A stretch of 64,000 nucleotides of DNA from Octopus bimaculoides (taxonomy: Eukaryota), in NCBI RefSeq assembly GCF_001194135.2, contig NC_068982.1:29532356-29596355 (forward strand). The letters are read 5' to 3'. The notes beneath the pieces are model-generated. The model had not been told where the DNA came from. It ran no database searches and saw only the letters and a program-made list of their open reading frames with translations. Position numbers and translations under genes: made by a program. Below, in pieces: positions 1,133 through 61,610 of the stretch. Each line of letters opens with the position of its first letter. The stretch's first letter is position 1.

Positions 1133-1482
1133 TATCATCATGAAAGAAAGAGAAAAAGTTGATGAATATGGAGACCTGAGAACTGAGATAGCTAAGATGT
1201 GGCAGCTACGAAAGTCGAACATGAAGGTTATCCCTATTGCCATCGGAGCATTGGATTCAATACCATCCAATCTGAAAAAAAAAACATCTGAAAACCTTAG
1301 AAATACCCTACAATCTAGGTGTATTGCAAAAGTCGGCATCACTTGGAACTACATGCATACTGCGTAAAGTTCTGTCTGTCAGAGGTCTTTGTTGTGACTT
1401 GACAAACAGTACAAACCCCACAGTAGATACAATATATTCAATCAACAACCTCACCATATTGTATACTGTGCAACATCTACAA
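1133..1482 (+). mobile_element. 5'-truncated R4/Dong-like non-LTR retrotransposon 3' end (restriction-like endonuclease C-terminus plus 3' UTR)
   Basis: ORF 1140-1367 reads KEREKVDEYGDLRTEIAKMWQLRKSNMKVIPIAIGALDSIPSNLKK. After a frameshift in the A-run it continues LQKSASLGTTCILRKVLSV, matching the EK..Y.DL..EI..W...V.PI.IGALG.IP and LQK...LGT..ILRKVL pattern of RLE-clade elements. Flanked on both sides by (TAA)n. Confidence 0.75.
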
Positions 1483-3625: not shown

Positions 3626-3735
3626 CTAGCTTGTCGAATGGCTTCAATCCAGGCAATGCAGTCAGCCTCGGTGTCAGCCTTAAGATCATATTGTCGTTGT
3701 CCGGCACTTTGGTGATAGGTGATACTAAAACAAAA
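3626..3735 (-). CDS. RASGRF: Internal coding exon of a Ras guanine-nucleotide releasing factor (Ras-GRF), end of the N-terminal PH domain
   Basis: 110 nt; acceptor ttatcacttttccag, donor GTAAG; phase 0 in, phase 2 out. Encodes FCFSITYHQSAGQRQYDLKADTEADCIAWIEAIRQA(S), which aligns from memory with RASGRF1 exon 2 HYFTVNFSHENQKALELRTEDAKDCDEWVAAIAHAS, including the PH-domain C-terminal Trp helix. PH domain is secure; family assignment rests on recalled similarity and intron phases. Confidence 0.82.
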
Positions 3736-4550
3736 CTGGAAAAGTGATAAAAACAGAATTAATAACAGCTTAGATAGAATTTTTGCAAAGACAATACACA
3801 TACACACACATCGATATATATAGGGAAAAATATGCACATACATGTATATGCAGAGAGATAGATGTTCATGTATATATGTGTGTGTGTGTGTGCGTGTGTG
3901 TGGGTGTGTGTGTGTATATATACATACAGATATGTATCTATAACATATATGAATATATATGTATATTTAAGCATATTCACACACACACACACACATATAT
4001 ATGTATATATACATACACACACATACATATTTTATGGTTTATGCTAAGGCATAGTGATACGAATAACCAATTGTTAGATCTCAACATACAGGAATACATA
4101 CATATGTATGTGTGTCTAATATATAAGTGGGATACATTGGTGTAATGGTAGCACAATTGTCACAATGACTATGTCGATGATGATGATGATATATATATAT
4201 ANNNNNNNNNNNNNNNNNNNNNNNNNNNNNNNNNNNNNNNNNNNNNNNNNNNNNNNNNNNNNNNNNNNNNNNNNNNNNNNNNNNNNNNNNNNNNNNNNNN
4301 NNNNNNNNNNNNNNNNNNNNNNNNNNNNNNNNNNNNNNNNNNNNNNNNNNNNNNNNNNNNNNNNNNNNNNNNNNNNNNNNNNNNNNNNNNNNNNNNNNNN
4401 NNNNNNNNNNNNNNNNNNNNNNNNNNNNNNNNNNNNNNNNNNNNNNNNNNNNNNNNNNNNNNNNNNNNNNNNNNNNNNNNNTCCTTGATATTTTGGGTAT
4501 TTGAGTATATATAAAAATTTAGGGAATGTAGTGAACGCATGTTATAACTG

Positions 4551-4649
4551 CATACTTTATTCCGACATATGTTTCGAAGAATTACAATTTATGCGATACA
4601 TAGGAATCGTCGATGTTAAAAATGTAAACTTCTCCTCAGGGAATGTATG
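4551..4649 (-). ncRNA. Type I hammerhead ribozyme with intact catalytic core
   Basis: Minus strand reads CAUAC-AUUCC [CUGAGGA] GAAG..CUUC [GAAA] CAUAUG [UC] GGAAU-AAA-GUAUG. Stem I is 5 bp + AAA bulge + 5 bp; stem II is GAAG/CUUC extended by UUACA/UGUAA; stem III is the palindrome ACAUAUGU. GUC cleavage is predicted between plus coordinates 4564 and 4563. Confidence 0.85.
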
Positions 4650-4726
4650 GGAACCATCTTAAACGTAAGACATTATGACCGAGTATCATAATCTCGGTCA
4701 TAATGTCTTACGTTTAAGATGGTTCC

Positions 4727-4825
4727 CATACATTCCCTGAGGAGAAGTTTACATTTTTAACATCGACGATTCCTATGTATCGCATAAATTGTAATTCTTC
4801 GAAGCATATGTCGGAATAAAGTATG
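4727..4825 (+). ncRNA. Type I hammerhead ribozyme copy with core substitution (GAAA to GAAG at A15.1)
   Basis: CATAC ATTCC CTGAGGA (4737-4743) GAAG..CTTC GAAG (4801-4804) CATATG TC GGAAT AAA GTATG. Same as the left-arm ribozyme except G at 4804. Confidence 0.8.
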
Positions 4826-5173
4826 CAGTTGTAACATGCGTTTACTCCATTCCTTAAATTTTTATATATATATATATACACACATAAAATATATATTGAT
4901 TTCATTCCTTTTAAGACATCCAGTCACTGTCTTCCCACTTCATTTTTTACCATTTTCATATTTTACTACACACACACATGTACACACAAACGCGCACATG
5001 TGAATACACACATATCTATTACAGGAAGCCAAAGAACAAATATATGTTTTATATGTTGAAGTGTGTGTGTATTGTCTTTATCTATGATGTCTATGTACAT
5101 ATATATATATATATATGTGTGTATATATGTATATATACATATATATGTATGTGTATATATGTATATATATATA

Positions 5174-5212
<39 letters not shown>

Positions 5213-5229
5213 ATGCATATATATATATT

Positions 5230-5271
<42 letters not shown>

Positions 5272-5350
5272 CATATTATATACGTACAATTACATAATTT
5301 ACACATGAATATATGTATGTATATATATGTATATACATGAATGAGCAGAT

Positions 5351-5389
<39 letters not shown>

Positions 5390-8300
5390 CACACACACAA
5401 GCTCATACGCTTACAAGCCCCACTGAATTCCATACCTAGATGCACTGTTGCCACCAATTTCCAGTCCAACTACGTAACTAAATAAACTCCTTCCCAGTTG
5501 CTTACTAAACAACACTATCAACCATGACATCATGTGACCTTCCCAGACCAATTGCAGCCCATCTCCCAATAACTATCTTCTGCTTCCTGTACCTCTCCGG
5601 TCATTTGGATTCTTGCCAGTATGAGAAGAAAGGCTCTGTTAAACTTGAAGTAGCATGGGATTCGAATCAAACTGTTTTGAATAATATGTGTATATTAAAA
5701 GGTAACAACAAGAGAATGAGACCTCGATGTTAGAGAAATAGAGGATTATTCATATATGTTATAATTTTGAACAAACAGTAAAAAGATCTTATTGGTNNNN
5801 NNNNNNNNNNNNNNNNNNNNNNNNNNNNNNNNNNNNNNNNNNNNNNNNNNNNNNNNNNNNNNNNNNNNNNNNNNNNNNNNNNNNNNNNNNNNNNNNNNNN
5901 NNNNNNNNNNNNNNNNNNNNNNNNNNNNNNNNNNNNNNNNNNNNNNNNNNNNNNNNNNNNNNNNNNNNNNNNNNNNNNNNNNNNNNNNNNNNNNNNNNNN
6001 NNNNNNNNNNNNNNNNNNNNNNNNNNNNNNNNNNNNNNNNNNNNNNNNNNNNNNNNNNNNNNNNNNNNNNNNNNNNNNNNNNNNNNNNNNNNNNNNNNNN
6101 NNNNNNNNNNNNNNNNNNNNNNNNNNNNNNNNNNNNNNNNNNNNNNNNNNNNNNNNNNNNNNNNNNNNNNNNNNNNNNNNNNNNNNNNNNNNNNNNNNNN
6201 NNNNNNNNNNNNNNNNNNNNNNNNNNNNNNNNNNNNNNNNNNNNNNNNNNNNNNNNNNNNNNNNNNNNNNNNNNNNNNNNNNNNNNNNNNNNNNNNNNNN
6301 NNNNNNNNNNNNNNNNNNNNNNNNNNNNNNNNNNNNNNNNNNNNNNNNNNNNNNNNNNNNNNNNNNNNNNNNNNNNNNNNNNNNNNNNNNNNNNNNNNNN
6401 NNNNNNNNNNNNNNNNNNNNNNNNNNNNNNNNNNNNNNNNNNNNNNNNNNNNNNNNNNNNNNNNNNNNNNNNNNNNNNNNNNNNNNNNNNNNNNNNNNNN
6501 NNNNNNNNNNNNNNNNNNNNNNNNNNNNNNNNNNNNNNNNNNNNNNNNNNNNNNNNNNNNNNNNNNNNNNNNNNNNNNNNNNNNNNNNNNNNNNNNNNNN
6601 NNNNNNNNNNNNNNNNNNNNNNNNNNNNNNNNNNNNNNNNNNNNNNNNNNNNNNNNNNNNNNNNNNNNNNNNNNNNNNNNNNNNNNNNNNNNNNNNNNNN
6701 NNNNNNNNNNNNNNNNCATTTATTTTATACATATATTAGTGCTTTCGTTCGTCTTTCTAACTTGTCAAATATAATTCTGTGAAAATACAGAGATCTAGCT
6801 TATTTATATAAAAACAGGTGTTTTGGGGGATTTTGTTTATAACAGAACATTGTTTTGTTTTTTTGTTTTTTGGGTTGAGGCTTTGGAGACAATGGAAGAT
6901 GTATAAGCAGATAGATAGATATATAGGCAGATAGAGAGATAGATAGATAGACTGATAGTCAGACAGATAGAGAGATGGATGTGTGTGTGTGTATGTACAT
7001 AAGTATGTATGTATGTGTATGCGTGAGAGTGTGTGTGTGTGCACATAAGCAAGGTCACCTGGAAGCCACAAGTACCCTGTATGAGTGAAGAGGAATGGGT
7101 CAACCAGGAATGAAACCTGCACCACAGATCCCACTTGCCAAGAGTTTAACAGCATTTGTGCACTTATTAACATGCATACATATGTGCATAATTGCAACGA
7201 ACTTCAGAAAGCTTTTCCACTGAGTATGAATAGTTATAGCGTGACATATGCACCATGTTGATAATGCAATATTTATTCCCAATTTTATAAGCTGGAGTTT
7301 ATTGAATTATATTTAGAAAAGAAAAATACACATCAATCGTTCTTTGTGATGTTAAATGTTTGTAAAATTTTGAAAGCAAAAAATAAGAAAGCTCATTTTT
7401 TTATCTAGACTTTTGCCAAAATATTAAAACATTGCCTTAATTATAGTTTATACTGTGTTTAGTGTTGGCAAAATATTTCAAGACCATTGAGATAACCAAT
7501 TATTTTTGTTTGTGCCATCTTCTCTTCTCTTATGTGTATTTAATAGCTATAATAATTCAGATAATGTTATTCCAGTGGTATCTGCTGGAAAAGATCAATG
7601 TGTCTTCTCTCTTCATGTACAAATGGATGGCTCAAAAATCTAATTAAAATATGCATTCCTGTTAAATTACCTTGGTTTTTGTTGTTGTTATTGGTGTTTT
7701 TGCTGTTCAACCCCAAGTCAGCCCTGAATGAGCATACCTATGATCAAAAGTGCTCAAGCTGTGATCACCATGTTTTTATTTATAATGTGGTGTATCCCAG
7801 AACTACCATACCTTCTTCCTCCTGGAACACATTCTATACAGATACTAATGTCCTAAAATATGTGTCTTCCATATCAAAGAAGGTTCAGATTTTGTTGGAA
7901 TTTTCGCTGCTACTTTGTGCAAGACATGTGACTACAGAAACTCTATGGTGGTTTAGTTTTCTGAGAAGGTCAAAAGCAATGGACGAGAAAAAGTACGTAT
8001 AAATTGTGCTATCAGCTAATACTTAAAAATAGACAAAACAAATTGAACATAAAGTAAGACACTGAGTTCTGATCTTATAAATGGGTCAATAAACAATGCA
8101 CATATGCTTTAAATTCATTTTTGCTTTTAATTTTGTGATAATATAATATTATAAAATGGACATTTTGTAGTATCTAAGTATATATATTATATATCATAGT
8201 ATTTAAGATATCAAAGAATAAAAACGAAAAGGAACATAATAGCATGTGTGCATGTGCATGTGTGTGTTTTAAATGGCCATCAAGTAAATGTTTTAGTTTC

Positions 8301-23054: not shown

Positions 23055-24759
23055 ATAAGTGGGTAAATTGATTGCATCAACCCCAGTACTCAACCGGCAT
23101 TTACTTCATTGACACCAAAAGGATGAAAGTCAAAATCAATTTCGGTGGTATTTGAACTCAGAAAGTAAAGATGGATGAAATGCTATAAAGCATTTTGCTT
23201 GGCATATAAATGATTCTGCTAGGTTACCACCTATCATGTCTTCACAGAATACTGGAAATGAATAACGTTGCTTGTATGGACAGTGACATTCAATTACAAC
23301 TGTCACATGATATCAAAACAAAGAGACATAACATACACACACACACACACATACATATATATATGTATAATGGGCTTTTCTCAGTACACATCTATCTGTT
23401 TCTGTCAATCAACACCACAAGGGTTTTTGTTGGTCAGGGCTATTGTAGAAGACATTTATCCAAGATGTCATGAAGCGGGTCTGAACCCAGAACCTCCTTA
23501 ATTCCCTGACCACATAGTCACACCTGCTTCTACTGTAAAACATGAAGCACATGCCAACTCAAAAATGAGCCTACCGTCACCAAGACTAGTGAGAAATTCA
23601 GGGATAATTTGTATGCTCAATATCAACCTATTCCAATCAAAATCAATGGGGAGCCAAGGAACAACCTGAATTTTCAAAATAAATCTAAAACACTTGCAAC
23701 ATAAACAATACAACATACATAAGCCAAAAGCCAAAATGAAGGCCTCTATGTGGTCACATGGACTGCTGGAAATAACAACTAAATATTTGACAACCACTGT
23801 ACCAACTTTAAATAAAACATTGCATTTGACTAAGTATTTTAGGATATATTTAAAAAAAGACAGGTGGGCATAGTTGGAGTGTCTTTCATCACTGGTCTGC
23901 TCAATCAAGGCTGATCTGGGGTTTAAAACAGCTGTATCATAAATCCATTTTGTTGGACTCTGATACTAACATTCCCATAACAGGAATTTCTTTAAACATG
24001 AAAAGAAGCAACGATTTTCAATTATGAGTATGAGGGATGAGTGGAGCAATAGGGAAGGGAAAATCAGAAATGAGTTAATTATTTGGAGATTTAATATAAT
24101 GGGAAAACGAATAAACAAATATACAAAAAAAAAATGTAAGGAAAGAAGAAAAGGATATAAAAAGATAAGGATGATGGTAACGATAGCGATGATGACTGTG
24201 ATGATGATCATAGTTATAATTATGATGGCGATGAAACAGAGAACCACTGTGATCACAACAATAAAGAAAATTCTACTAATGATGATGATGATGGGATGAT
24301 GGGAAAGTGTGCAGAGTATTTTAAAGTACCACAACTGTAGCAATATCAGCAAAATATTGAAGATAAAACACAACTTAAATTCCTGCTACCAATTGCGAGA
24401 TATGGAAAATAGAAGAGAAACATCTAGAAAAATATTTAAAAGCATAAAAAAAAGAAAAACAAAAAAGAAAGAGACATAAACATTATAGTTTGATTGATTT
24501 TTAACTCAGAAAATATCTAATTTGAAGGAAAAGATTTTGCATGTTTTAAATTAAATTTGTAAAATTAGAATTAATTTAAAATGAACAGCATTGCCACATA
24601 CACACGCATTATATACTCATATACATGTATGTATATGTTTATTTGTGAGAATATATGTGTGTGTGTGTGTGTGAAACATAATTATCGACCAAATGAAATT
24701 ATTACATATATATACATATACATTTCTGATTATGTATAAACACTTTTATCTGTAAACCC

Positions 24760-25403: not shown

Positions 25404-25632
25404 CCTCATCATCGTTTAACGTCTGCTTTACATGCTAGCATGGGTTGGACGATTTGACTGAGGACTGGCGAACCAGATGGTTGTGCCAGGCTCCAATCTG
25501 ATCTGGTAGAGTTTCTACAGCTGGATGCCCTTCCTAACGCCAACCACTCCGAGAGTGTAGTGGGTGCTTTTACTTGCCGCCGGCATGAGGGCCAGTCAGG
25601 CTGTACTGCCAACAGCCACGCTCAAATGGTGT
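25404..25632 (-). mobile_element. Family C RTE-type 3' UTR copy, followed by an older related copy at about 25640-25900
   Basis: CATCATCGTTTAACGTCTGCTTTACATGCTAGCATGGGTTGGACG..GGATGCCCTTCCTAACGCCAACCACTCCGAGAG. Confidence 0.85.
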
Positions 25633-29374: not shown

Positions 29375-29730
29375 GGGTTGATGCCAGTTCCGCCTGACTG
29401 GCAGTCGTGCTGGTGGCACATACTAAGCATCATTCAAGCATTGGTTGATGCCAGTGCCGCTTGACTGGCTCCCCATGCTGATGGCATGTAAAAAGCACCA
29501 TCTGAAAGTGGTCGATGCCAGTGCCGCCTGACTGGCTCCCATGCTGGTGGCACGTAAAATGCACCTACTACAATCTCAGAATGGTTGGCATTAGGAAGGG
29601 TATCCAACTGTATAAACCTTGCCAGATCAGATTGGAGCCTGGTGCAGCCTACTGGCTTGCCAGTCCCCAGTCAAACCGTCCAACCTATGCTAGCATAGAA
29701 AATGGACGTTAAATGATGATGATGATGATG
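29375..29730 (+). mobile_element. Family C RTE-type 3' UTR copy with three internal subrepeats
   Basis: GATGCCAGT(T/G)CCGC(C/T)TGACTGGC unit at about 29380, 29447 and 29514; ends GCTAGCATAGAAAATGGACGTTAAATGATGATGATG. Confidence 0.85.
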
Positions 29731-31139
29731 TACTTATGTATGTATGTGTTTATATCAGCATCTCTTTGGTTTGACATTGCTTGATGGTTGTAAATGAGTG
29801 TCTCTGTCATGCAAGTGGTGTCCTTTATTTTCAAGTAATGTGTAATATAGTAACTGTAATTTTTAAATTAAAGTACTTTAAAGAAAATATCTAAGTTCTG
29901 TGTTAGCATTGTATCATAGTATATTACTATACTGTGATGTAGAAATTCATAATCAATTTTCGTTTTTTGTAGGTTATCAGTCATTGTTTTTACTTTTAAT
30001 GAATTATCAGTTCAATTTAATTTGATTAATTATGCAACAAGAGAGTGAAAAGAGACCTAGTTTAGCTTGTTATTGGATTTGCTTTTGTACCTGATTAATG
30101 AGCAGGTCATATAACTTATTATTAGTATAAATTAACCGCAATAAAATAACCAATTAGAATTCTTTTGTTTTCTCGAATTCTTTCAAGTATAAAATGTGAG
30201 TAACAACTGAAGGAGAGGGAGAGAGATTTATTCAAAATTACTTAATTGTTCAGTATTTTGGTATCTAGAAATAGTTTGCACACCTATACAATGTGTTAGG
30301 TGTTATTAAAATGCAAACAGTCTATATTTTCATGCAACCAAACTAAACTTGCTATTTTAAAATCAATTCTGATACTCTCTCTTGATATTTGAACCAGATA
30401 TTGATTTATTTGGTGTCTAGATACAGCTGGTGCAGTACAAACAGAGCTTAGAGAATTAGCATTAAATTCTATACAAGAAGAATAAATAAGAATTCAGTTG
30501 ATGAAAAAAAAATAATTGAAACAAAAAATAAAAACCGAAACATGATTAAAAAAAAAATCATGAAAAACTCCATCTTGGTAATGCTTACTAAATATTTGAC
30601 TCTCCTTTCTTTTAAATTACCACTAAAGTAGAAAATGATATTAATTAAATTTATTGTTGATTGTCAGCATATAAATATATTTAAAAAATAATACTCTCAA
30701 TTAGAATGTTGATGTTTTCTCAACACTGATAGAATTATCATGAGGGGAAAAGATATTTCACCTTTTCTATGTAACACTTATATATGAATTAAACATTTCC
30801 TTAAATTACAGATCAAATTAATAATGCAAACTAGAAAATTAACTCTATGTTGCTCTATTTTAGTCATGAATTGTTATTCCATATAGGAATAAATAAATTC
30901 ATTGCCTAAAGTGGATCTTGAAAAATAAGTGAAAAATTGCAAAACAAAAATCATTATTGATATTTGTTGATATTGTTTTATATTTTATTCAGGTTTTATA
31001 ATAGGGAAAAATTAAGTATGCTTTCATAATGGGTTAAAAGGTCATACAATGCTATGGAAACAATCAGCCATAGTTTTTAAACAGAATACAGCATATGAGT
31101 ATCATTACAATTATAAATAAATTGAAATTGGTACTTTTA

Positions 31140-31329: not shown

Positions 31330-31369
<40 letters not shown>

Positions 31370-31550
31370 ACACACACACACACATGTGCATGCACATATG
31401 ACAGGCTTCTTTCAGTTTTCATAAACCAAATCTGCTCACAAGGTTTTGATCAGCTCAAGGTTATAGTAAAAGACACTTGCCTAATGTGTCATGCAGTGGG
31501 ACTGAACCTGGAATCATGTGACTGGGAAGCAAAACACCTATGCTTGTGCC
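31140..31550 (-). mobile_element. SINE family B, diverged full-length copy
   Basis: GCTGGAGCACTGCC..GATCCCAG..AACACCAACACTGGTTGT..(CA)n..GACAGGCTTCTTTCAGTTT..GACACTTGCC..GGGACTGAACC. Confidence 0.8.
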
Positions 31551-36555: not shown

Positions 36556-37653
36556 NNNNNNNNNNNNNNNNNNNNNNNNNNNNNNNNNNNNNNNNNNNNN
36601 NNNNNNNNNNNNNNNNNNNNNNNNNNNNNNNNNNNNNNNNNNNNNNNNNNNNNNNNNNNNNNNNNNNNNNNNNNNNNNNNNNNNNNNNNNNNNNNNNNNN
36701 NNNNNNNNNNNNNNNNNNNNNNNNNNNNNNNNNNNNNNNNNNNNNNNNNNNNNNNNNNNNNNNNNNNNNNNNNNNNNNNNNNNNNNNNNNNNNNNNNNNN
36801 NNNNNNNNNNNNNNNNNNNNNNNNNNNNNNNNNNNNNNNNNNNNNNNNNNNNNNNNNNATCTTTGCCTTGATTTCATGTGATGGTTGTAAACAGATGTCA
36901 GTGTTGTGCAAGCAGTGTCCTTCATTTTCAATCTTCCATATAAGCATATCTGATTATGAGGATTATTACCTTACTCCTGAACAAGCATTTGTAAAAATAT
37001 GTCTGGCCGTGGGACAATATTACCTTGCTTGAAAACGGGACGGGCATCCGACCAATAAAAACATCTACCTCAATAATCTCTGTGCAACCCATGGAAGCAT
37101 GGAAAAATGGATGTTAAGATGATGATGATAATGATGATGATGATGATGATGATGATAGTTATGATGATGATAATAATGATGATTTATTTTCCCATGTCAT
37201 AAATAATTGATGGAGTTTTGAAAATGTTGAAATTAGTGAGTAAAATGTCAAACTGATATTTTTAATGCTAGAAGCTCTTCTCTCTGTTTACCATGTAGCT
37301 TATCATCATCAACATCATTGTTTAATGTTTGTTTTCCAGGCTGGCATGGGCTGGATGGTTTGGTTTGACAGAAACTGGTTAGCCGGAGAAATGCATTAGG
37401 GTCCAATTGTCTGTTTTGGCATGATTTTTATGACTTGATGCCCTTCCTAATGTCAACCACTCTACAAAGTGTGATTTTTACGTGCCACTGGCACAAAACC
37501 ATTTCTGTGACACTGGCATGAGTGCATTTTATGTGGTACCAGCATCTGCAAGACAAAAATCTCTCTGCTAGGAGAAGAAGTTGAGGCATGACCATAAAGT
37601 ATATGCCTGTACATAAGGATGGCCACAGTTTTAGTTATGAGACAGAAATGCAT

Positions 37654-46110: not shown

Positions 46111-46148
46111 TATATAAATTCCATTTATTTTATTAATACTATATATAT

Positions 46149-46503
46149 CATCATCATCATCATCGTTTAACGTCCGCTTTCCATGCTAGCATGGGTTGGA
46201 CGATTTGACCGAGGATTGGTGGACCAGGAGGCGACACCAGGCTCCAATCTGATTTGGCAGAGTTTCTACAGCTGGATGCCCTTCCTAACGCCAACCACTC
46301 CGAGAGTGTAGTGGGTGCTTTTACGTGCCACCGGCATGAAGGCCAGTCAGGCGGTACTGGCAATGACCACGCTTAAAATGGTGTATTTTATGTGCCACCC
46401 GCACAAGAGCCAGTCCAGGGGCACTGGCAACGATCTCGCTCGAAAGTCCTTACACATGCCACGGGCATAAGTGGCAGAAAGGCAACGCTGGGCACAGGTG
46501 CCA
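46149..46503 (-). mobile_element. Family C RTE-type 3' UTR copy, long and young
   Basis: Longest C copy, CpG-rich, with internal GTGCCACC..GCAC..CCAGTC..GGCA(A/C) subrepeats; tail abuts ATATATAT. Confidence 0.9.
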
Positions 46504-50684: not shown

Positions 50685-51343
50685 CAGTGATTCTCAACCA
50701 AGGTCTATATGACCCTTGGGTGGGAGTCCAATTAAGATTTTATTAAAATGTATGTACAATAAGTTGGTTATACTTCTATAATGCACAAAATATTTTAACA
50801 ATTTGGTAAGTAGCTTGCTTACCAACCACATGGTTCCGGGTTCATTCTCTCTGTGTGGCACCTTGGGCAAGTGTCTTCTACTATAGCCTTGGGCTGACCA
50901 AAGCCTTGTGAGTGGATTTGGTAGACAGAAACTGAAAGAAGCCCATCGTATATATGTATATATGTGTGTATGTGTGTGTATATGTTTGTGTGTCTGTGTT
51001 TGTCCCCCCAACATCGCTTGACAACCGATGGTGGTGTGTTTATGTCCCCGTAACTTAGCGGTTCGGCAAAAGTGATCGATAGAATAAGTACTAGGCTTCC
51101 AAAGAATAAGTCCTGGGGTCGATTTGCTCGACTAAAGGCGGTGCTCCAGCATGGCCACAGTCAAATGACTGAAACAAGTAAAAGAGTAAAAGAGTAAAGA
51201 GCAATTTTTTTAATGCAGTTCCTAATATTTAATTATAAAAATGTAGGATTCTTATTTTACACATCAAATAGCTATAAGGACCCACTCTAATAAAGTAGGA
51301 ATCAAAGGAGTTCCATAGATAAAAATATGGTTGAGAACTACAA
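50685..51343. mobile_element. Inner Charlie-like hAT MITE
   Basis: TIRs CAGTGATTCTCAACCA and TGGTTGAGAACTACAA; 8-bp flanks CCCTAGAC and CCCTACAT. Confidence 0.7.
50805..51201 (+). mobile_element. SINE family B, young and slightly 5'-truncated, with target-site duplication
   Basis: CAATTT flanks both ends (50799-50804 and 51202-51207); tail AAAGAGTAAAAGAGTAAAGAG; CpGs retained. Confidence 0.92.
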
Positions 51344-56447: not shown

Positions 56448-56805
56448 ACCAAATTCGATGACTGGCACCTGTACCAGTGAAGCGCTAACAACACCATCTG
56501 AGCATGATCATTGCCAGAGCAGCTGTCTGGCTTCCATGCCTGGTGCAGCCATCTGGTTCGCCAGTCCTCAGTCAAATCGTCCAACCCATGCTAGCATGGA
56601 AAGCAGATATTAAACGATGATGATGATGACATATATATCCAACAGGCTTCTTTCAGTTTCCGTCTACCAAATCTACTCAGAAGGCTTTAGTGAGCCTGAG
56701 GCCTTAATAGAAGATACTTGCCCAAGGTGCCATGCAGTGAGGCTGAACCCAGAACCATGAGTTTGAGAAGTAAGCTTCTCACCATACAGCCACTCCTGCA
56801 CCTAT
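56010..56805 (-). mobile_element. SINE family B split (3' half about 56010-56215, 5' half about 56640-56805) by two insertions in its central microsatellite
   Basis: The two halves are colinear with 22658-23054. Between them lie a TA-tailed Penelope-like repeat (about 56270-56445) and a family C copy (56446-56630, plus strand). Confidence 0.75.
56279..56314 (+). ncRNA. Hammerhead-like architecture with altered core (variant or relic)
   Basis: CTTT CTCTTGA A GAGT-GTAG-GCTT GAAA CG TA AAAG: 4-bp stem I, stem II with two G-T pairs, palindromic ACGT, GUA triplet; core has 2 mismatches to CUGAUGA. Confidence 0.4.
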
Positions 56806-57159
56806 ATCTAAGTTTGTATGTAGCATATGGTTAGATAATTTTTTGACAATTTCAACTCGTGGCCTTGTGGAAAAGGTATTAAGTTCACTATCAAAAAGGT
56901 TATGGGTTTATTTCTTAGACTCGGCAACAAATTGTGTCCTTAGTCAAGGCACTTTATTTCATGTCATTTCAGTCTGCCCAGTTGAAATGAATACCAGTTC
57001 ATTGCTAGGACAGCCCTTTTTCCTTGCAGCTGTCAAATTCTGTTAGTTGGGTTATATGTGCAGTAAAAACCAAGAAGGTGACCACATAGGCACTGAAAAT
57101 AATTTGTGAAAACATAGTATATGCTTTCAAGTCCTCTATTCCTAGAGACAGCCATAGCA

Positions 57160-61449: not shown

Positions 61450-61610
61450 GGGCTTCTTTCAGTTTCTGTCAACTAAATCCACTCACAGGGCTTTGGTCAG
61501 CCCATGGCAAAATAAGAAGACACTTGCCCAATATGCCAAGCAGTGGGATTGAACCGAAAGTGACGTGGTAGAGAAATGAACTTCTTAGCACACAGCCATG
61601 TCTGTGCCAT
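61140..61610 (-). mobile_element. SINE family B with an expanded internal (TG)n
   Basis: 3' half CTGGTACACCACCTTGAA..AACCCCAGTAC, about 110 bp TG tract, 5' half GGCTTCTTTCAGTTTCTGTCAACTAAATCCACTCAC..CACACAGCCATG. Confidence 0.8.

What the first reader, a model, noticed from the sequence alone, without database searches (positions are those of the whole stretch)
4506..4870. Self-masked double hammerhead ribozyme hairpin just upstream of the RasGRF PH exon
Seen in sequence: each arm of a 178-bp inverted repeat contains a complete type I hammerhead, with bulged stem I, CUGAGGA, a long stem II and a palindromic stem III (ACAUAUGU). The minus-strand copy (4551-4649) has every core residue and a GUC site; the plus-strand copy (4727-4825) has GAAG for GAAA. 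On either strand the ribozyme's full antisense is transcribed first. Established knowledge: Penelope-like retroelements carry type I hammerheads with palindromic stem III in their terminal repeats and can leave inverted terminal-repeat pairs. Inference: a ribozyme in host-sense orientation about 0.8 kb (assembly distance, across a gap) before a splice acceptor could cut the pre-mRNA but is locked off by its own duplex. It would act as a neutralised or conditionally releasable cleavage switch.
Basis: partly seen in the sequence, partly recalled or inferred. Interest (0 to 1): 0.9.

Follow-up and report, generated by a model that had tools for sequence, protein, structure and literature searches.

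The report
Inverted pair of retroelement hammerhead ribozymes
Two mirror-image copies of a short mobile-element fragment, each carrying a hammerhead self-cleaving RNA motif, sit in an intron; this looks like an ordinary transposon relic whose ribozyme is buried in a long hairpin, with no evidence that it is a gene switch.

Summary
Arms 4506-4683 and 4693-4870 are a 178-nt inverted repeat with 5 mismatches and a 9-nt loop. Each arm carries a 99-nt type I hammerhead. The minus-strand copy (4649..4551) has every core residue, G10.1-C11.1, a bulged helix I, a 57-nt helix II, the palindromic helix III ACAUAUGU and a GUC site (C17 = 4564). The plus-strand copy differs only by A15.1G (4804). It is the only such motif in the 64 kb, where about 0.007 equally good matches are expected by chance. 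Rfam Hammerhead_1 scores 18.4 bits, below its gathering score of 34.

New here: each arm is about 1.25 units of a roughly 117-nt head-to-tail repeat and ends in (TA)n. That matches non-LTR retrozyme or Penelope pLTR fragments. Inverted 5'-truncated copies, (TA)n targets and opposite-strand hammerhead pairs are all published for these elements.

The gene is on the minus strand, so the intact copy is host-sense, about 0.83 kb upstream of a PH-domain exon. 'RasGRF' could not be verified.

Masking is thermodynamically overwhelming: -285 kcal/mol for the hairpin against about -11 for the ribozyme fold. Nothing supports a releasable switch. No other family copies could be retrieved, and the 1.3-kb contig lies between assembly gaps. 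Verdict: a new member of a known kind, low interest.

The parts
4506..4683 (-). Left arm. This element copy reads on the minus strand: 5'-truncated end at the centre, 3' end at 4506 running into (TA)n.
   Evidence: 178-nt arm, 5 mismatches to the right arm
4684..4692 (.). 9-nt loop (TATCATAAT) between the arms
4693..4870 (+). Right arm. The same element copy reads on the plus strand, with its 3' end at 4870 running into (TA)n.
4551..4649 (-). Type I hammerhead with an intact core. Helix I is 4649-4640 paired with 4563-4551, with an AAA bulge at 4558-4556. CUGAGGA is 4639-4633. Helix II is 4632-4576. G12-A14 is 4575-4573. Helix III ACAUAUGU is 4572-4565. C17 is 4564, and the predicted cut is 4564|4563.
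   Evidence: (Rfam RF00163, 18.4 bits, full model)
4727..4825 (+). Second hammerhead copy, identical except for A15.1 to G at 4804. C17 is 4812.
   Evidence: one difference; no Rfam hit at E <= 10
4638..4664 (-). Direct-repeat block A (GTTTAAGATGGTTCCCATACATTCCCT). It includes the 5' strand of helix I and C3-U4. Its mirror in the right arm is 4712-4738(+).
4521..4548 (-). Direct-repeat block B (GTTATAACATGCGTTCACTACATTCCCT), the start of a second unit about 117 nt downstream. The element ends right after CCCT. Its mirror is 4828-4855(+).
   Evidence: local alignment score 27, reached by 0 of 2000 shuffles
3626..3735 (-). Exon encoding the C-terminal part of a PH domain (...YHQSAGQRQYDLKADTEADCIAWIEAIRQA). 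Acceptor AG lies at 3737-3736 or 3726-3725. The donor is AG|GTAAG at 3626|3625.
   Evidence: (Pfam PH E = 3.7e-5)
4202..4481 (.). Assembly gap (280 N) directly left of the hairpin. Together with gap 5797-6716 it isolates the 1.3-kb contig 4482-5796 that carries the hairpin.

Best explanation
This is a relic of a hammerhead-bearing retroelement of the non-LTR retrozyme / Penelope-like pLTR kind. About 1.5 units of a roughly 117-nt head-to-tail repeat, each unit built around a type I hammerhead, are present as a head-to-head inverted duplication. It sits in a (TA)n microsatellite inside an intron of a PH-domain gene.

In its parent element the ribozyme cuts multimeric element transcripts after GUC. 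It probably acts through dimers that join their palindromic helix III segments, releasing unit-length RNA for circularisation and retrotransposition.

At this locus that function is idle. Both arms stop at the same nucleotide and are joined by 9 nt, which points to one fold-back event rather than two insertions. That event was either PLE-type inverted-copy formation or snap-back self-priming.

Any transcript, including the host pre-mRNA, makes the antisense arm first. It then zips into a roughly 180-bp hairpin that buries the ribozyme. The expected effect on the host gene is none from the ribozyme. At most there is a generic long-dsRNA effect, such as editing or dicing.

Shown: the sequence anatomy, the chance estimates, the energies, the gene strand and the internal direct repeat. 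Inferred: the parent family, how the palindrome formed, and the lack of function.
For: - There is a complete type I core with three helices, and it is the only such site in 64 kb. About 0.007 equally good sites are expected per window.
- Rfam Hammerhead_1 aligns over its full model with every core position.
- It has features that Cervera & de la Pena use to argue against random motifs: G10.1-C11.1 and a palindromic 15.2-16.2 plus loop 3.
- Helix I of 5 bp then a bulge, helix II of 4 bp then an internal loop, and helix III of 2 bp plus a palindromic tetraloop are close to the published canonical metazoan type I layout (helix I 6 bp, helix II 4 bp; helix III matches).
- The arm holds a significant direct repeat with a period of about 117 nt that starts at helix I, so it is a head-to-tail unit structure. 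Published retrozyme units span 51-972 bp.
- PLE-type elements are documented to form adjacent inverted 5'-truncated copies, to prefer (TA)n targets and to break short-read assemblies. Here both outer ends run into (TA)n, and a gap abuts the element.
- Hammerhead pairs on opposite strands 100-700 bp apart are reported in Schistosoma.
- Energies: hairpin -285 kcal/mol; antisense duplex over the ribozyme segment -164; ribozyme fold -10.9; homodimer -36.0, using an intermolecular ACAUAUGU helix.
- Five arm differences and a unique 24-nt left flank argue against a trivial fold-back artefact.
Against: - No other copy of the family could be retrieved. There is none in the window. Translated-ORF searches, exact look-ups and DNA pattern scans found nothing related. 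Family membership, covariation and any link to a PLE reverse transcriptase are therefore untested.
- The Rfam score is below gathering (18.4 against 34). At genome scale, scores like this occur by chance.
- The 57-nt helix II is unusual.
- Only 1.25 units are visible, so 'tandem repeat' rests on one 27-28-nt repeat.
- All 5 mismatches lie in the outer 67 nt of the arm (P about 0.008 if uniform), which is unexplained.
- The contig is bounded by gaps, so its placement and orientation depend on scaffolding.
Confidence: 0.7

Rival explanations
1. The inverted pair is a selected, neutralised or conditionally releasable ribozyme switch. When the duplex is opened, for example by a helicase or by hyper-editing, the host-sense hammerhead cuts the pre-mRNA about 0.83 kb before the PH exon.
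For: - The intact-core copy is in host sense, in an intron, upstream of an exon.
- Masking by the antisense arm is real in thermodynamic terms.
- Domesticated intronic type I hammerheads exist in amniotes (RECK, CTCL).
- Retrozymes are somewhat depleted from introns in Xenopus, which suggests that unmasked copies can be harmful.
Against: - There is no evidence of conservation, expression or release.
- A 178-bp near-perfect duplex with a 9-nt loop forms by zippering as the second arm emerges, much faster than hammerhead folding and cleavage. Published rates for relatives are about 0.1 min-1 or lower.
- Helix III is only 2 bp plus a tetraloop, and no second sense copy is present in the transcript to form the active dimer.
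- The arms are diverging (5 differences, one of them in the core of the other copy), as expected for neutral decay.
- The arrangement is a known by-product of PLE-type insertion.
- There is no HH9 or HH10 match.
Confidence: 0.03
2. Assembly artefact. Only one arm, or a different arrangement, exists in the genome. The palindrome or its placement in this intron was created by short-read assembly, gap filling or scaffolding.
For: - The hairpin starts 24 nt from a contig edge, in a 1.3-kb contig island between N gaps of 280 and 920.
- The inner 111 bp of the arms are perfectly complementary, and all 5 mismatches are in the outer 67 nt.
- PLE-type structures are known to disturb short-read assemblies.
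Against: - The left arm has its own non-palindromic 24-nt flank and 5 differences from the right arm, which a simple fold-back of one copy would not give.
- Inverted copies are a genuine, common outcome for these elements.
Confidence: 0.12
3. A fold-back or MITE-type DNA element, or another palindromic repeat, whose hammerhead-like sequence is a chance match.
For: - The Rfam score is below gathering, with no hit at window scale.
- The monomer fold is no better than shuffles (z = 0.24).
- TA-rich ends are compatible with TA target duplications.
- At genome scale, hundreds of base-level descriptor matches are expected. This extrapolates from 0.007 per 60 kb.
Against: - Several extra features were not required by the descriptor: a 5-bp closing stem beyond the helix I bulge, G10.1-C11.1, a fully palindromic 8-nt helix III, and a 4-bp extension of helix II. 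My analytical estimate brings the chance expectation to below about one per genome of a few Gb.
- The roughly 117-nt head-to-tail repeat begins at helix I, which is typical of hammerhead satellite or retrozyme units and not of MITEs.
Confidence: 0.08
4. The relevant activity is the hairpin itself. A roughly 180-bp intronic dsRNA would serve as a substrate for ADAR editing or Dicer (endo-siRNA or miRNA-like), and the hammerhead would be incidental.
For: The predicted hairpin is near-perfect at -285 kcal/mol (z = -46). Rfam's only hits on the whole region are generic long-hairpin miRNA models, all far below gathering.
Against: The miRNA hits reflect hairpin shape only. There are no small-RNA or editing data. 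Any inverted repeat would behave this way.
Confidence: 0.07

Closest known systems
Non-LTR retrozymes: tandem type I hammerhead repeats of metazoans (Cervera & de la Pena 2020, PMC7229834; Li et al. 2026 bioRxiv 10.64898/2026.07.22.740005)
   Same: - A canonical-style type I hammerhead: helix I of 5 bp then an internal bulge, helix II of 4 bp, and helix III of 2 bp with a palindromic tetraloop.
- A/T-rich sequence.
- A head-to-tail unit structure, with a period of about 117 nt that falls within the published 51-972 bp range.
- Frequent monomeric or degenerate copies, many of them in introns.
   Different: - Only about 1.25 units are visible.
- The copy is duplicated in inverted rather than tandem orientation.
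- Helix II carries a 49-nt extension, so the ribozyme fills nearly the whole unit.
- Multi-copy status and circRNA expression are untested.
Penelope-like element pLTRs and their hammerheads (Cervera & de la Pena 2014, PMC4209133; Craig et al. 2021, PMC8557442)
   Same: - The hammerhead lies near the element's 3' end.
- 5'-truncated copies are arranged as adjacent inverted repeats.
- The flanks are (TA)n.
- Hammerhead pairs on opposite strands within 100-700 bp are reported.
- There is assembly trouble around the element.
   Different: - There is no RT or GIY-YIG ORF; the arms are 9 nt apart.
[quoted passage not shown]
Domesticated intronic hammerheads HH9 and HH10 of amniotes (de la Pena & Garcia-Robles 2010; review PMC6155905)
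   Same: A type I hammerhead in host-sense orientation inside an intron, thought to derive from retroelement hammerheads.
   Different: - Those are single, unmasked, ultraconserved motifs with a stable monomer fold.
- Here there is no Rfam HH9 or HH10 match, no conservation data, and a full antisense partner.
Newt satellite 2 and Schistosoma Sm-alpha hammerheads (Rfam RF00163)
   Same: The same core. Helix I is open with an internal loop. Helix III is weak and palindromic, implying dimer-dependent cleavage.
   Different: The score is below the Rfam gathering threshold because of a 53-nt insertion in helix II. The sequence is otherwise unrelated.

Membership tests
Type I hammerhead ribozyme (Rfam RF00163, clan CL00010) | Conserved core C3-U4-G5-A6-N7-G8-A9 ... 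G12-A13-A14 ... A15.1-U16.1, H17 | tested here: met
   The minus copy 4649..4551 has every position. The plus copy fails at A15.1 (G at 4804).
Type I hammerhead ribozyme (Rfam RF00163, clan CL00010) | Three helices around the core, with helix I open-ended and a G10.1-C11.1 pair | tested here: met
   Helix I is 5 + 5 bp with an AAA bulge. Helix II is 4 bp (G-C first), an internal loop, then 4 bp. Helix III is 2 bp plus AUAU. The ribozyme-constrained fold is -10.9 kcal/mol against an MFE of -12.9.
Type I hammerhead ribozyme (Rfam RF00163, clan CL00010) | Score at or above the curated Rfam gathering threshold | tested here: not met
   18.4 bits against 34. There is no hit in the whole-window gathering search. 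The loss comes mainly from the 53-nt helix II insertion.
Type I hammerhead ribozyme (Rfam RF00163, clan CL00010) | Self-cleavage after H17 | not testable with these tools
   Needs in vitro transcription and cleavage assays.
Type I hammerhead ribozyme (Rfam RF00163, clan CL00010) | Covariation in the helices across homologues | not testable with these tools
   No homologues were retrievable. The two arms are identical in all helices.
Non-LTR retrozyme | Head-to-tail repeats, each unit carrying a type I hammerhead | tested here: inconclusive
   A 27-28-nt direct repeat with a period of about 117 nt starts a second unit (0 of 2000 shuffles reach its score). Only one complete hammerhead is present per arm.
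Non-LTR retrozyme | Multi-copy dispersed or tandem family in the genome, expressed as small circRNAs | not testable with these tools
   There is no other copy in the 64-kb window.
Penelope-like element (autonomous copy) | ORF with a TERT-like RT and a GIY-YIG endonuclease between pLTRs | tested here: not met
   The arms are separated by 9 nt. There is no long ORF. Pfam finds nothing in neighbouring minus-strand segments.
Penelope-like element (truncated insertion) | Inverted or partial-tandem 5'-truncated copies with a microsatellite ((TA)n) target | tested here: met
   The copies are head-to-head with their 3' ends outward, and both run into (TA)n. This matches the description in PMC8557442.
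PLE min-HHR (Cervera & de la Pena 2014) | [quoted passage not shown] | tested here: not met
   There is no extra nucleotide. Helix II is 4 bp before an internal loop. Helix III is 2 bp plus a tetraloop. The palindromic 15.2-16.2/loop 3 and G10.1-C11.1 are met.
Domesticated intronic hammerhead (HH9/HH10) | Match to RF02275 or RF02277 and deep conservation in orthologous introns | tested here: not met
   There is no HH9 or HH10 hit at E <= 10. Conservation is not testable.
MITE / fold-back DNA transposon | Terminal inverted repeats with a target-site duplication, and a multi-copy family | tested here: inconclusive
   The whole element is a palindrome. Its ends lie in (TA)n, so no TSD can be defined. 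Copy number is unknown.

The most novel reading that the evidence does not exclude
Fold-back duplication is a recurrent, selected way for hammerhead-bearing retroelement insertions to be tolerated in sense orientation inside genes, because the antisense arm disarms the ribozyme. Alternatively, the duplex is opened under some condition, for example by ADAR hyper-editing or a helicase, so that the host-sense ribozyme cuts the pre-mRNA.
Probability: 0.04. Interest if true: 0.7.

Novelty: new member of a known kind. Interest (0 to 1): 0.22.

Why it matters
It matters little as it stands. The locus adds one more hammerhead-bearing retroelement relic to the thousands known in metazoan genomes.

Two details are mildly useful. 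First, the compact roughly 117-nt unit, in which a 57-nt helix II makes the ribozyme nearly the whole repeat, is a variant that the Rfam gathering threshold misses. Second, it is a clean example of a sense-strand intronic hammerhead that is fully masked by its own inverted copy.

A genome-wide survey could test whether intronic sense-strand copies are preferentially of this masked form. If they were, that would explain how such elements persist in genes and would tie in with the reported depletion of retrozymes from introns.

Tried and rejected
- Rfam at gathering threshold on the whole window gave no hits.
- Rfam by E-value on the whole hairpin returned only generic long-hairpin miRNA and sRNA models far below gathering. 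I rejected these as shape artefacts.
- I looked for other copies of the arm in several ways:
  - blastn in the window gave only (TA)n noise.
  - A translated arm ORF used as a proxy query in the protein word search found nothing.
  - An exact look-up of the arm ORF and of another window ORF found nothing on record.
  - Exact 22-mer scans of the metagenome and viral collections found nothing.
  - A core pattern with a 40-65-nt gap gave 3 metagenome hits. They are G+C-rich, lack a proper helix I and are chance matches. The viral collection gave none.
- I tried to identify the host gene and organism:
  - A protein search with the PH exon failed once for length and once with no hits.
  - A search with a TE-like ORF found nothing.
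  - PDB gave only generic PH domains.
  - A regex for the N-terminal PH motif gave only one match, at 21837-21860(-), which I did not judge to be a PH N-terminal exon.
  - Pfam on neighbouring minus-strand segments found nothing.
  - So 'RasGRF' and the organism remain unverified.
- A literature search for the helix III string found only unrelated hits. No supplementary text is held for PMC4209133.
- I tested whether the 24 nt nearest the centre match the preceding repeat unit. They do not, at a significant level.
- A relaxed dimer-type and min-HHR scan of the window found no further motif.
Full report

Yes. The repeat finder reports arms 4494-4683 and 4693-4882 (190 nt, 95% complementary, 9 nt apart). 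blastn of the region on itself gives 96.2% over 366 nt for 4506-4870. The additional outer matches are (TA)-rich flank.

The minus-strand RNA 4649..4551 reads as follows:
- helix I 5' strand: CAUAC-AUUCC
- core: CUGAGGA
- helix II: GAAG, an internal loop, UACA, 35 nt, UGUA, an internal loop, CUUC
- G12-A14: GAA
- helix III: ACAUAUGU
- C17 at 4564
- helix I 3' strand: GGAAU-AAA-GUAUG

Every conserved hammerhead position is present, including G10.1-C11.1. The plus-strand copy (4727..4825) has G at 4804. In standard numbering this is A15.1 to G, not a change in G12-A14.

**2. Is it more than chance?**

My own type I descriptor requires helix I of at least 4 bp, CUGANGA, helix II of at least 3 bp with up to about 70 nt inside, GAAA, helix III and UH. 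It finds exactly one site on both strands of the 64 kb, and it is this one. A second descriptor aimed at dimer-type and minimal motifs also finds only this site.

In 300 first-order Markov simulations of the window, the loose descriptor hits 0.087 times per window. Hits as good as the observed one occur about 0.007 times per window.

Four further features were not demanded by the descriptor:
- a 5-bp closing stem beyond the helix I bulge;
- G-C at 10.1/11.1;
- a fully palindromic 8-nt helix III;
- a 4-bp continuation of helix II.

By a rough analytical estimate, these lower the chance expectation to less than one per genome of a few Gb.

Rfam is less generous. There is nothing at gathering threshold in the window. 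When the minus arm is searched alone, Hammerhead_1 aligns over its full 45-position model with all core positions. It reaches only 18.4 bits against a gathering score of 34 (E = 0.027 for that small search), because of a 53-nt insertion in helix II. The plus arm gives no hit at E <= 10, consistent with the A15.1G change. HH9 and HH10 do not match. Searching the whole hairpin returns only generic long-hairpin miRNA models far below their thresholds. I discount these.

**3. What surrounds it?**

The window is a short-read scaffold with 17 N gaps, most of them next to (TA)n or (CA)n. The hairpin sits in a 1.3-kb contig (4482-5796) between gaps of 280 and 920 N. It begins 24 nt from the contig edge.

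The nearby exon is on the minus strand, at about 3626-3735. It has a polypyrimidine-AG acceptor and an AG|GTAAG donor. It encodes ...YHQSAGQRQYDLKADTEADCIAWIEAIRQA. That sequence is the C-terminal strand and helix of a PH domain (Pfam PH E = 3.7e-5; the best PDB matches are PLEKHA7 PH domains).

The exon encodes only the end of a PH domain and has an acceptor site. Upstream exons must therefore exist, and the hairpin is intronic if the scaffold is right. The host-sense ribozyme is thus the intact minus-strand copy, 829-840 nt (including the 280-N gap) upstream of the acceptor.

'RasGRF' could not be verified. Protein searches with the exon found nothing, and no other domain-bearing exon was found within about 8 kb on that strand.

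**4. A new anatomical point.**

Within each arm, the 27-28 nt that lead into the ribozyme recur about 117 nt downstream, just after the ribozyme:
- block A, 4664..4638(-): GTTTAAGATGGTTCCCATACATTCCCT
- block B, 4548..4521(-): GTTATAACATGCGTTCACTACATTCCCT

The local alignment score is 27, and none of 2000 shuffles reaches it.

The arm is therefore about 1.25 units of a head-to-tail repeat in which the hammerhead occupies 99 of roughly 117 nt. The element ends immediately after the second unit's CCCU, in AAATTTTTATATATA followed by (TA)n. The 24 nt nearest the centre do not significantly match the previous unit.

The two copies are head-to-head. Their 5'-truncated ends meet at the 9-nt loop and their 3' ends point outward into (TA)n.

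**5. What is it?**

The anatomy matches published hammerhead-bearing retroelements.

- Cervera & de la Pena (PMC4209133) describe metazoan type I hammerheads. Helix I is about 6 bp, helix II about 4 bp, and helix III is 1-2 bp with a palindromic 2-4-nt loop that works through dimers. They note G10.1-C11.1 and the palindromic 15.2-16.2/loop 3 as non-random hallmarks. They also report hammerhead pairs 100-700 bp apart on opposite strands, and many single motifs from truncated PLEs.
- Craig et al. (PMC8557442) describe PLE insertions as heavily 5'-truncated. These often have an inverted 5'-truncated copy directly adjacent, (TA)n target bias, and resulting short-read assembly problems.
- Non-LTR retrozymes are tandem repeats that each carry a type I hammerhead (PMC7229834). 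Family consensus lengths run from 51 to 972 bp. Many copies are monomeric, and 42-44% of copies overlap introns in Xenopus despite a modest depletion (bioRxiv 10.64898/2026.07.22.740005).

The motif here is closer to the canonical retrozyme-type hammerhead than to the PLE 'min-HHR'. [quoted passage not shown]

There is no RT or GIY-YIG ORF. The arms are 9 nt apart.

I could not retrieve any further family member from the collections on hand. Family membership therefore rests on anatomy, not on homology.

**6. How it most likely works, or fails to.**

In the parent element, the ribozyme would cut multimeric transcripts after GUC. The isolated 99-nt RNA can adopt the hammerhead fold at -10.9 kcal/mol against an MFE of -12.9. 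Two copies gain about 10 kcal/mol by forming an intermolecular ACAUAUGU helix III (-36.0 against 2 x -12.9). That agrees with dimer-dependent cleavage.

At this locus, every transcript of either strand makes the antisense arm first. The duplex over the ribozyme segment is -164 kcal/mol, and the whole hairpin is -285 kcal/mol (z = -46). With a 9-nt loop, the second arm zips up as it emerges. Published relatives cleave at about 0.1 min-1 or far less. No second sense copy is present in the transcript to form a dimer.

The 'self-masked' description is therefore sound. The simplest reading is an inert relic.

Both arms stop at the same nucleotide. This points to a single fold-back event, either PLE-type inverted-copy formation or snap-back priming, followed by about 2.8% divergence. 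One of the substitutions has already hit the core of the plus copy.

**7. Rivals.**

- **Releasable switch (about 3%).** It has no positive evidence, and the kinetics, the helix III weakness and the neutral-looking divergence all count against it.
- **Assembly artefact (about 12%).** This cannot be excluded. The contig is gap-bounded, and all five mismatches fall in the outer 67 of 178 nt (P about 0.008 if uniform). However, the left arm has its own unique flank and its own substitutions.
- **Chance hammerhead in a fold-back or MITE element (about 8%).** The extra canonical features and the head-to-tail unit argue against it.
- **A generic dsRNA role, through editing or dicing (about 7%).** This is possible for any such hairpin, but it is untested.

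**8. Novelty and verdict.**

The finding is real as sequence and correctly described. It is a new member of a known kind. Hammerhead-bearing retroelement fragments, inverted pairs and intronic copies are all already documented. The regulatory interpretation is unsupported.

Two points are mildly interesting: the compact unit with a 57-nt helix II, which falls below the Rfam gathering score, and the survey question of whether masked pairs are the tolerated form of sense-strand intronic insertions.

Interest is 0.22.

Noticed in passing
window 13900-14250; copies at 46140-46370, 25406-25619, 29508-29755(-), 56538-56638(-), 37313-37497: An interspersed repeat family of about 230 bp, 71-92% identical among copies, present at least six times in the window. 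It carries a spurious open frame (…DWPSCRWHVKAPT…LALGRASSCRNSA…). It looks SINE-like, but ARAGORN finds no tRNA-like head.
   Followed up: partly
window 22780-23100; copies at 50804-51063(-), 17117-17430(-), 56634-56806, 31357-31532, 17860-18058, 61451-61598 and others: A second, more abundant interspersed repeat of about 260 bp, with at least 12 copies at 68-90% identity, usually adjacent to (CA)n. The hammerhead arm, by contrast, has no further copy in the 64 kb.
   Followed up: partly
window 4506-4683 versus 4693-4870: All five differences between the arms lie in the outer 67 nt, and the inner 111 bp on each side of the loop are perfectly complementary (P about 0.008 if uniform). This could be gene conversion near the hairpin tip, or the assembler collapsing the inner palindrome.
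   Followed up: partly
window 4202-4481, 5797-6716 and 15 further N runs: There are seventeen assembly gaps, most of them abutting (TA)n or (CA)n microsatellites. The contig that carries the hairpin (4482-5796) is only 1.3 kb long, so its position and orientation within the intron depend on scaffolding.
   Followed up: no
window 1140-1367 (+): A 75-aa ORF (…DLRTEIAKMWQLRKSNMKVIPIAIGALDSIP…) that resembles the C-terminal tail of invertebrate retrotransposon ORFs from memory. It has no Pfam hit, and the protein word search found no homologue.
   Followed up: partly
window 4684-4692 and 4693-4705: The 9-nt loop TATCATAAT resembles the adjacent arm sequence GGTCATAAT. This microhomology could mark the template switch or snap-back point that created the palindrome.
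   Followed up: no
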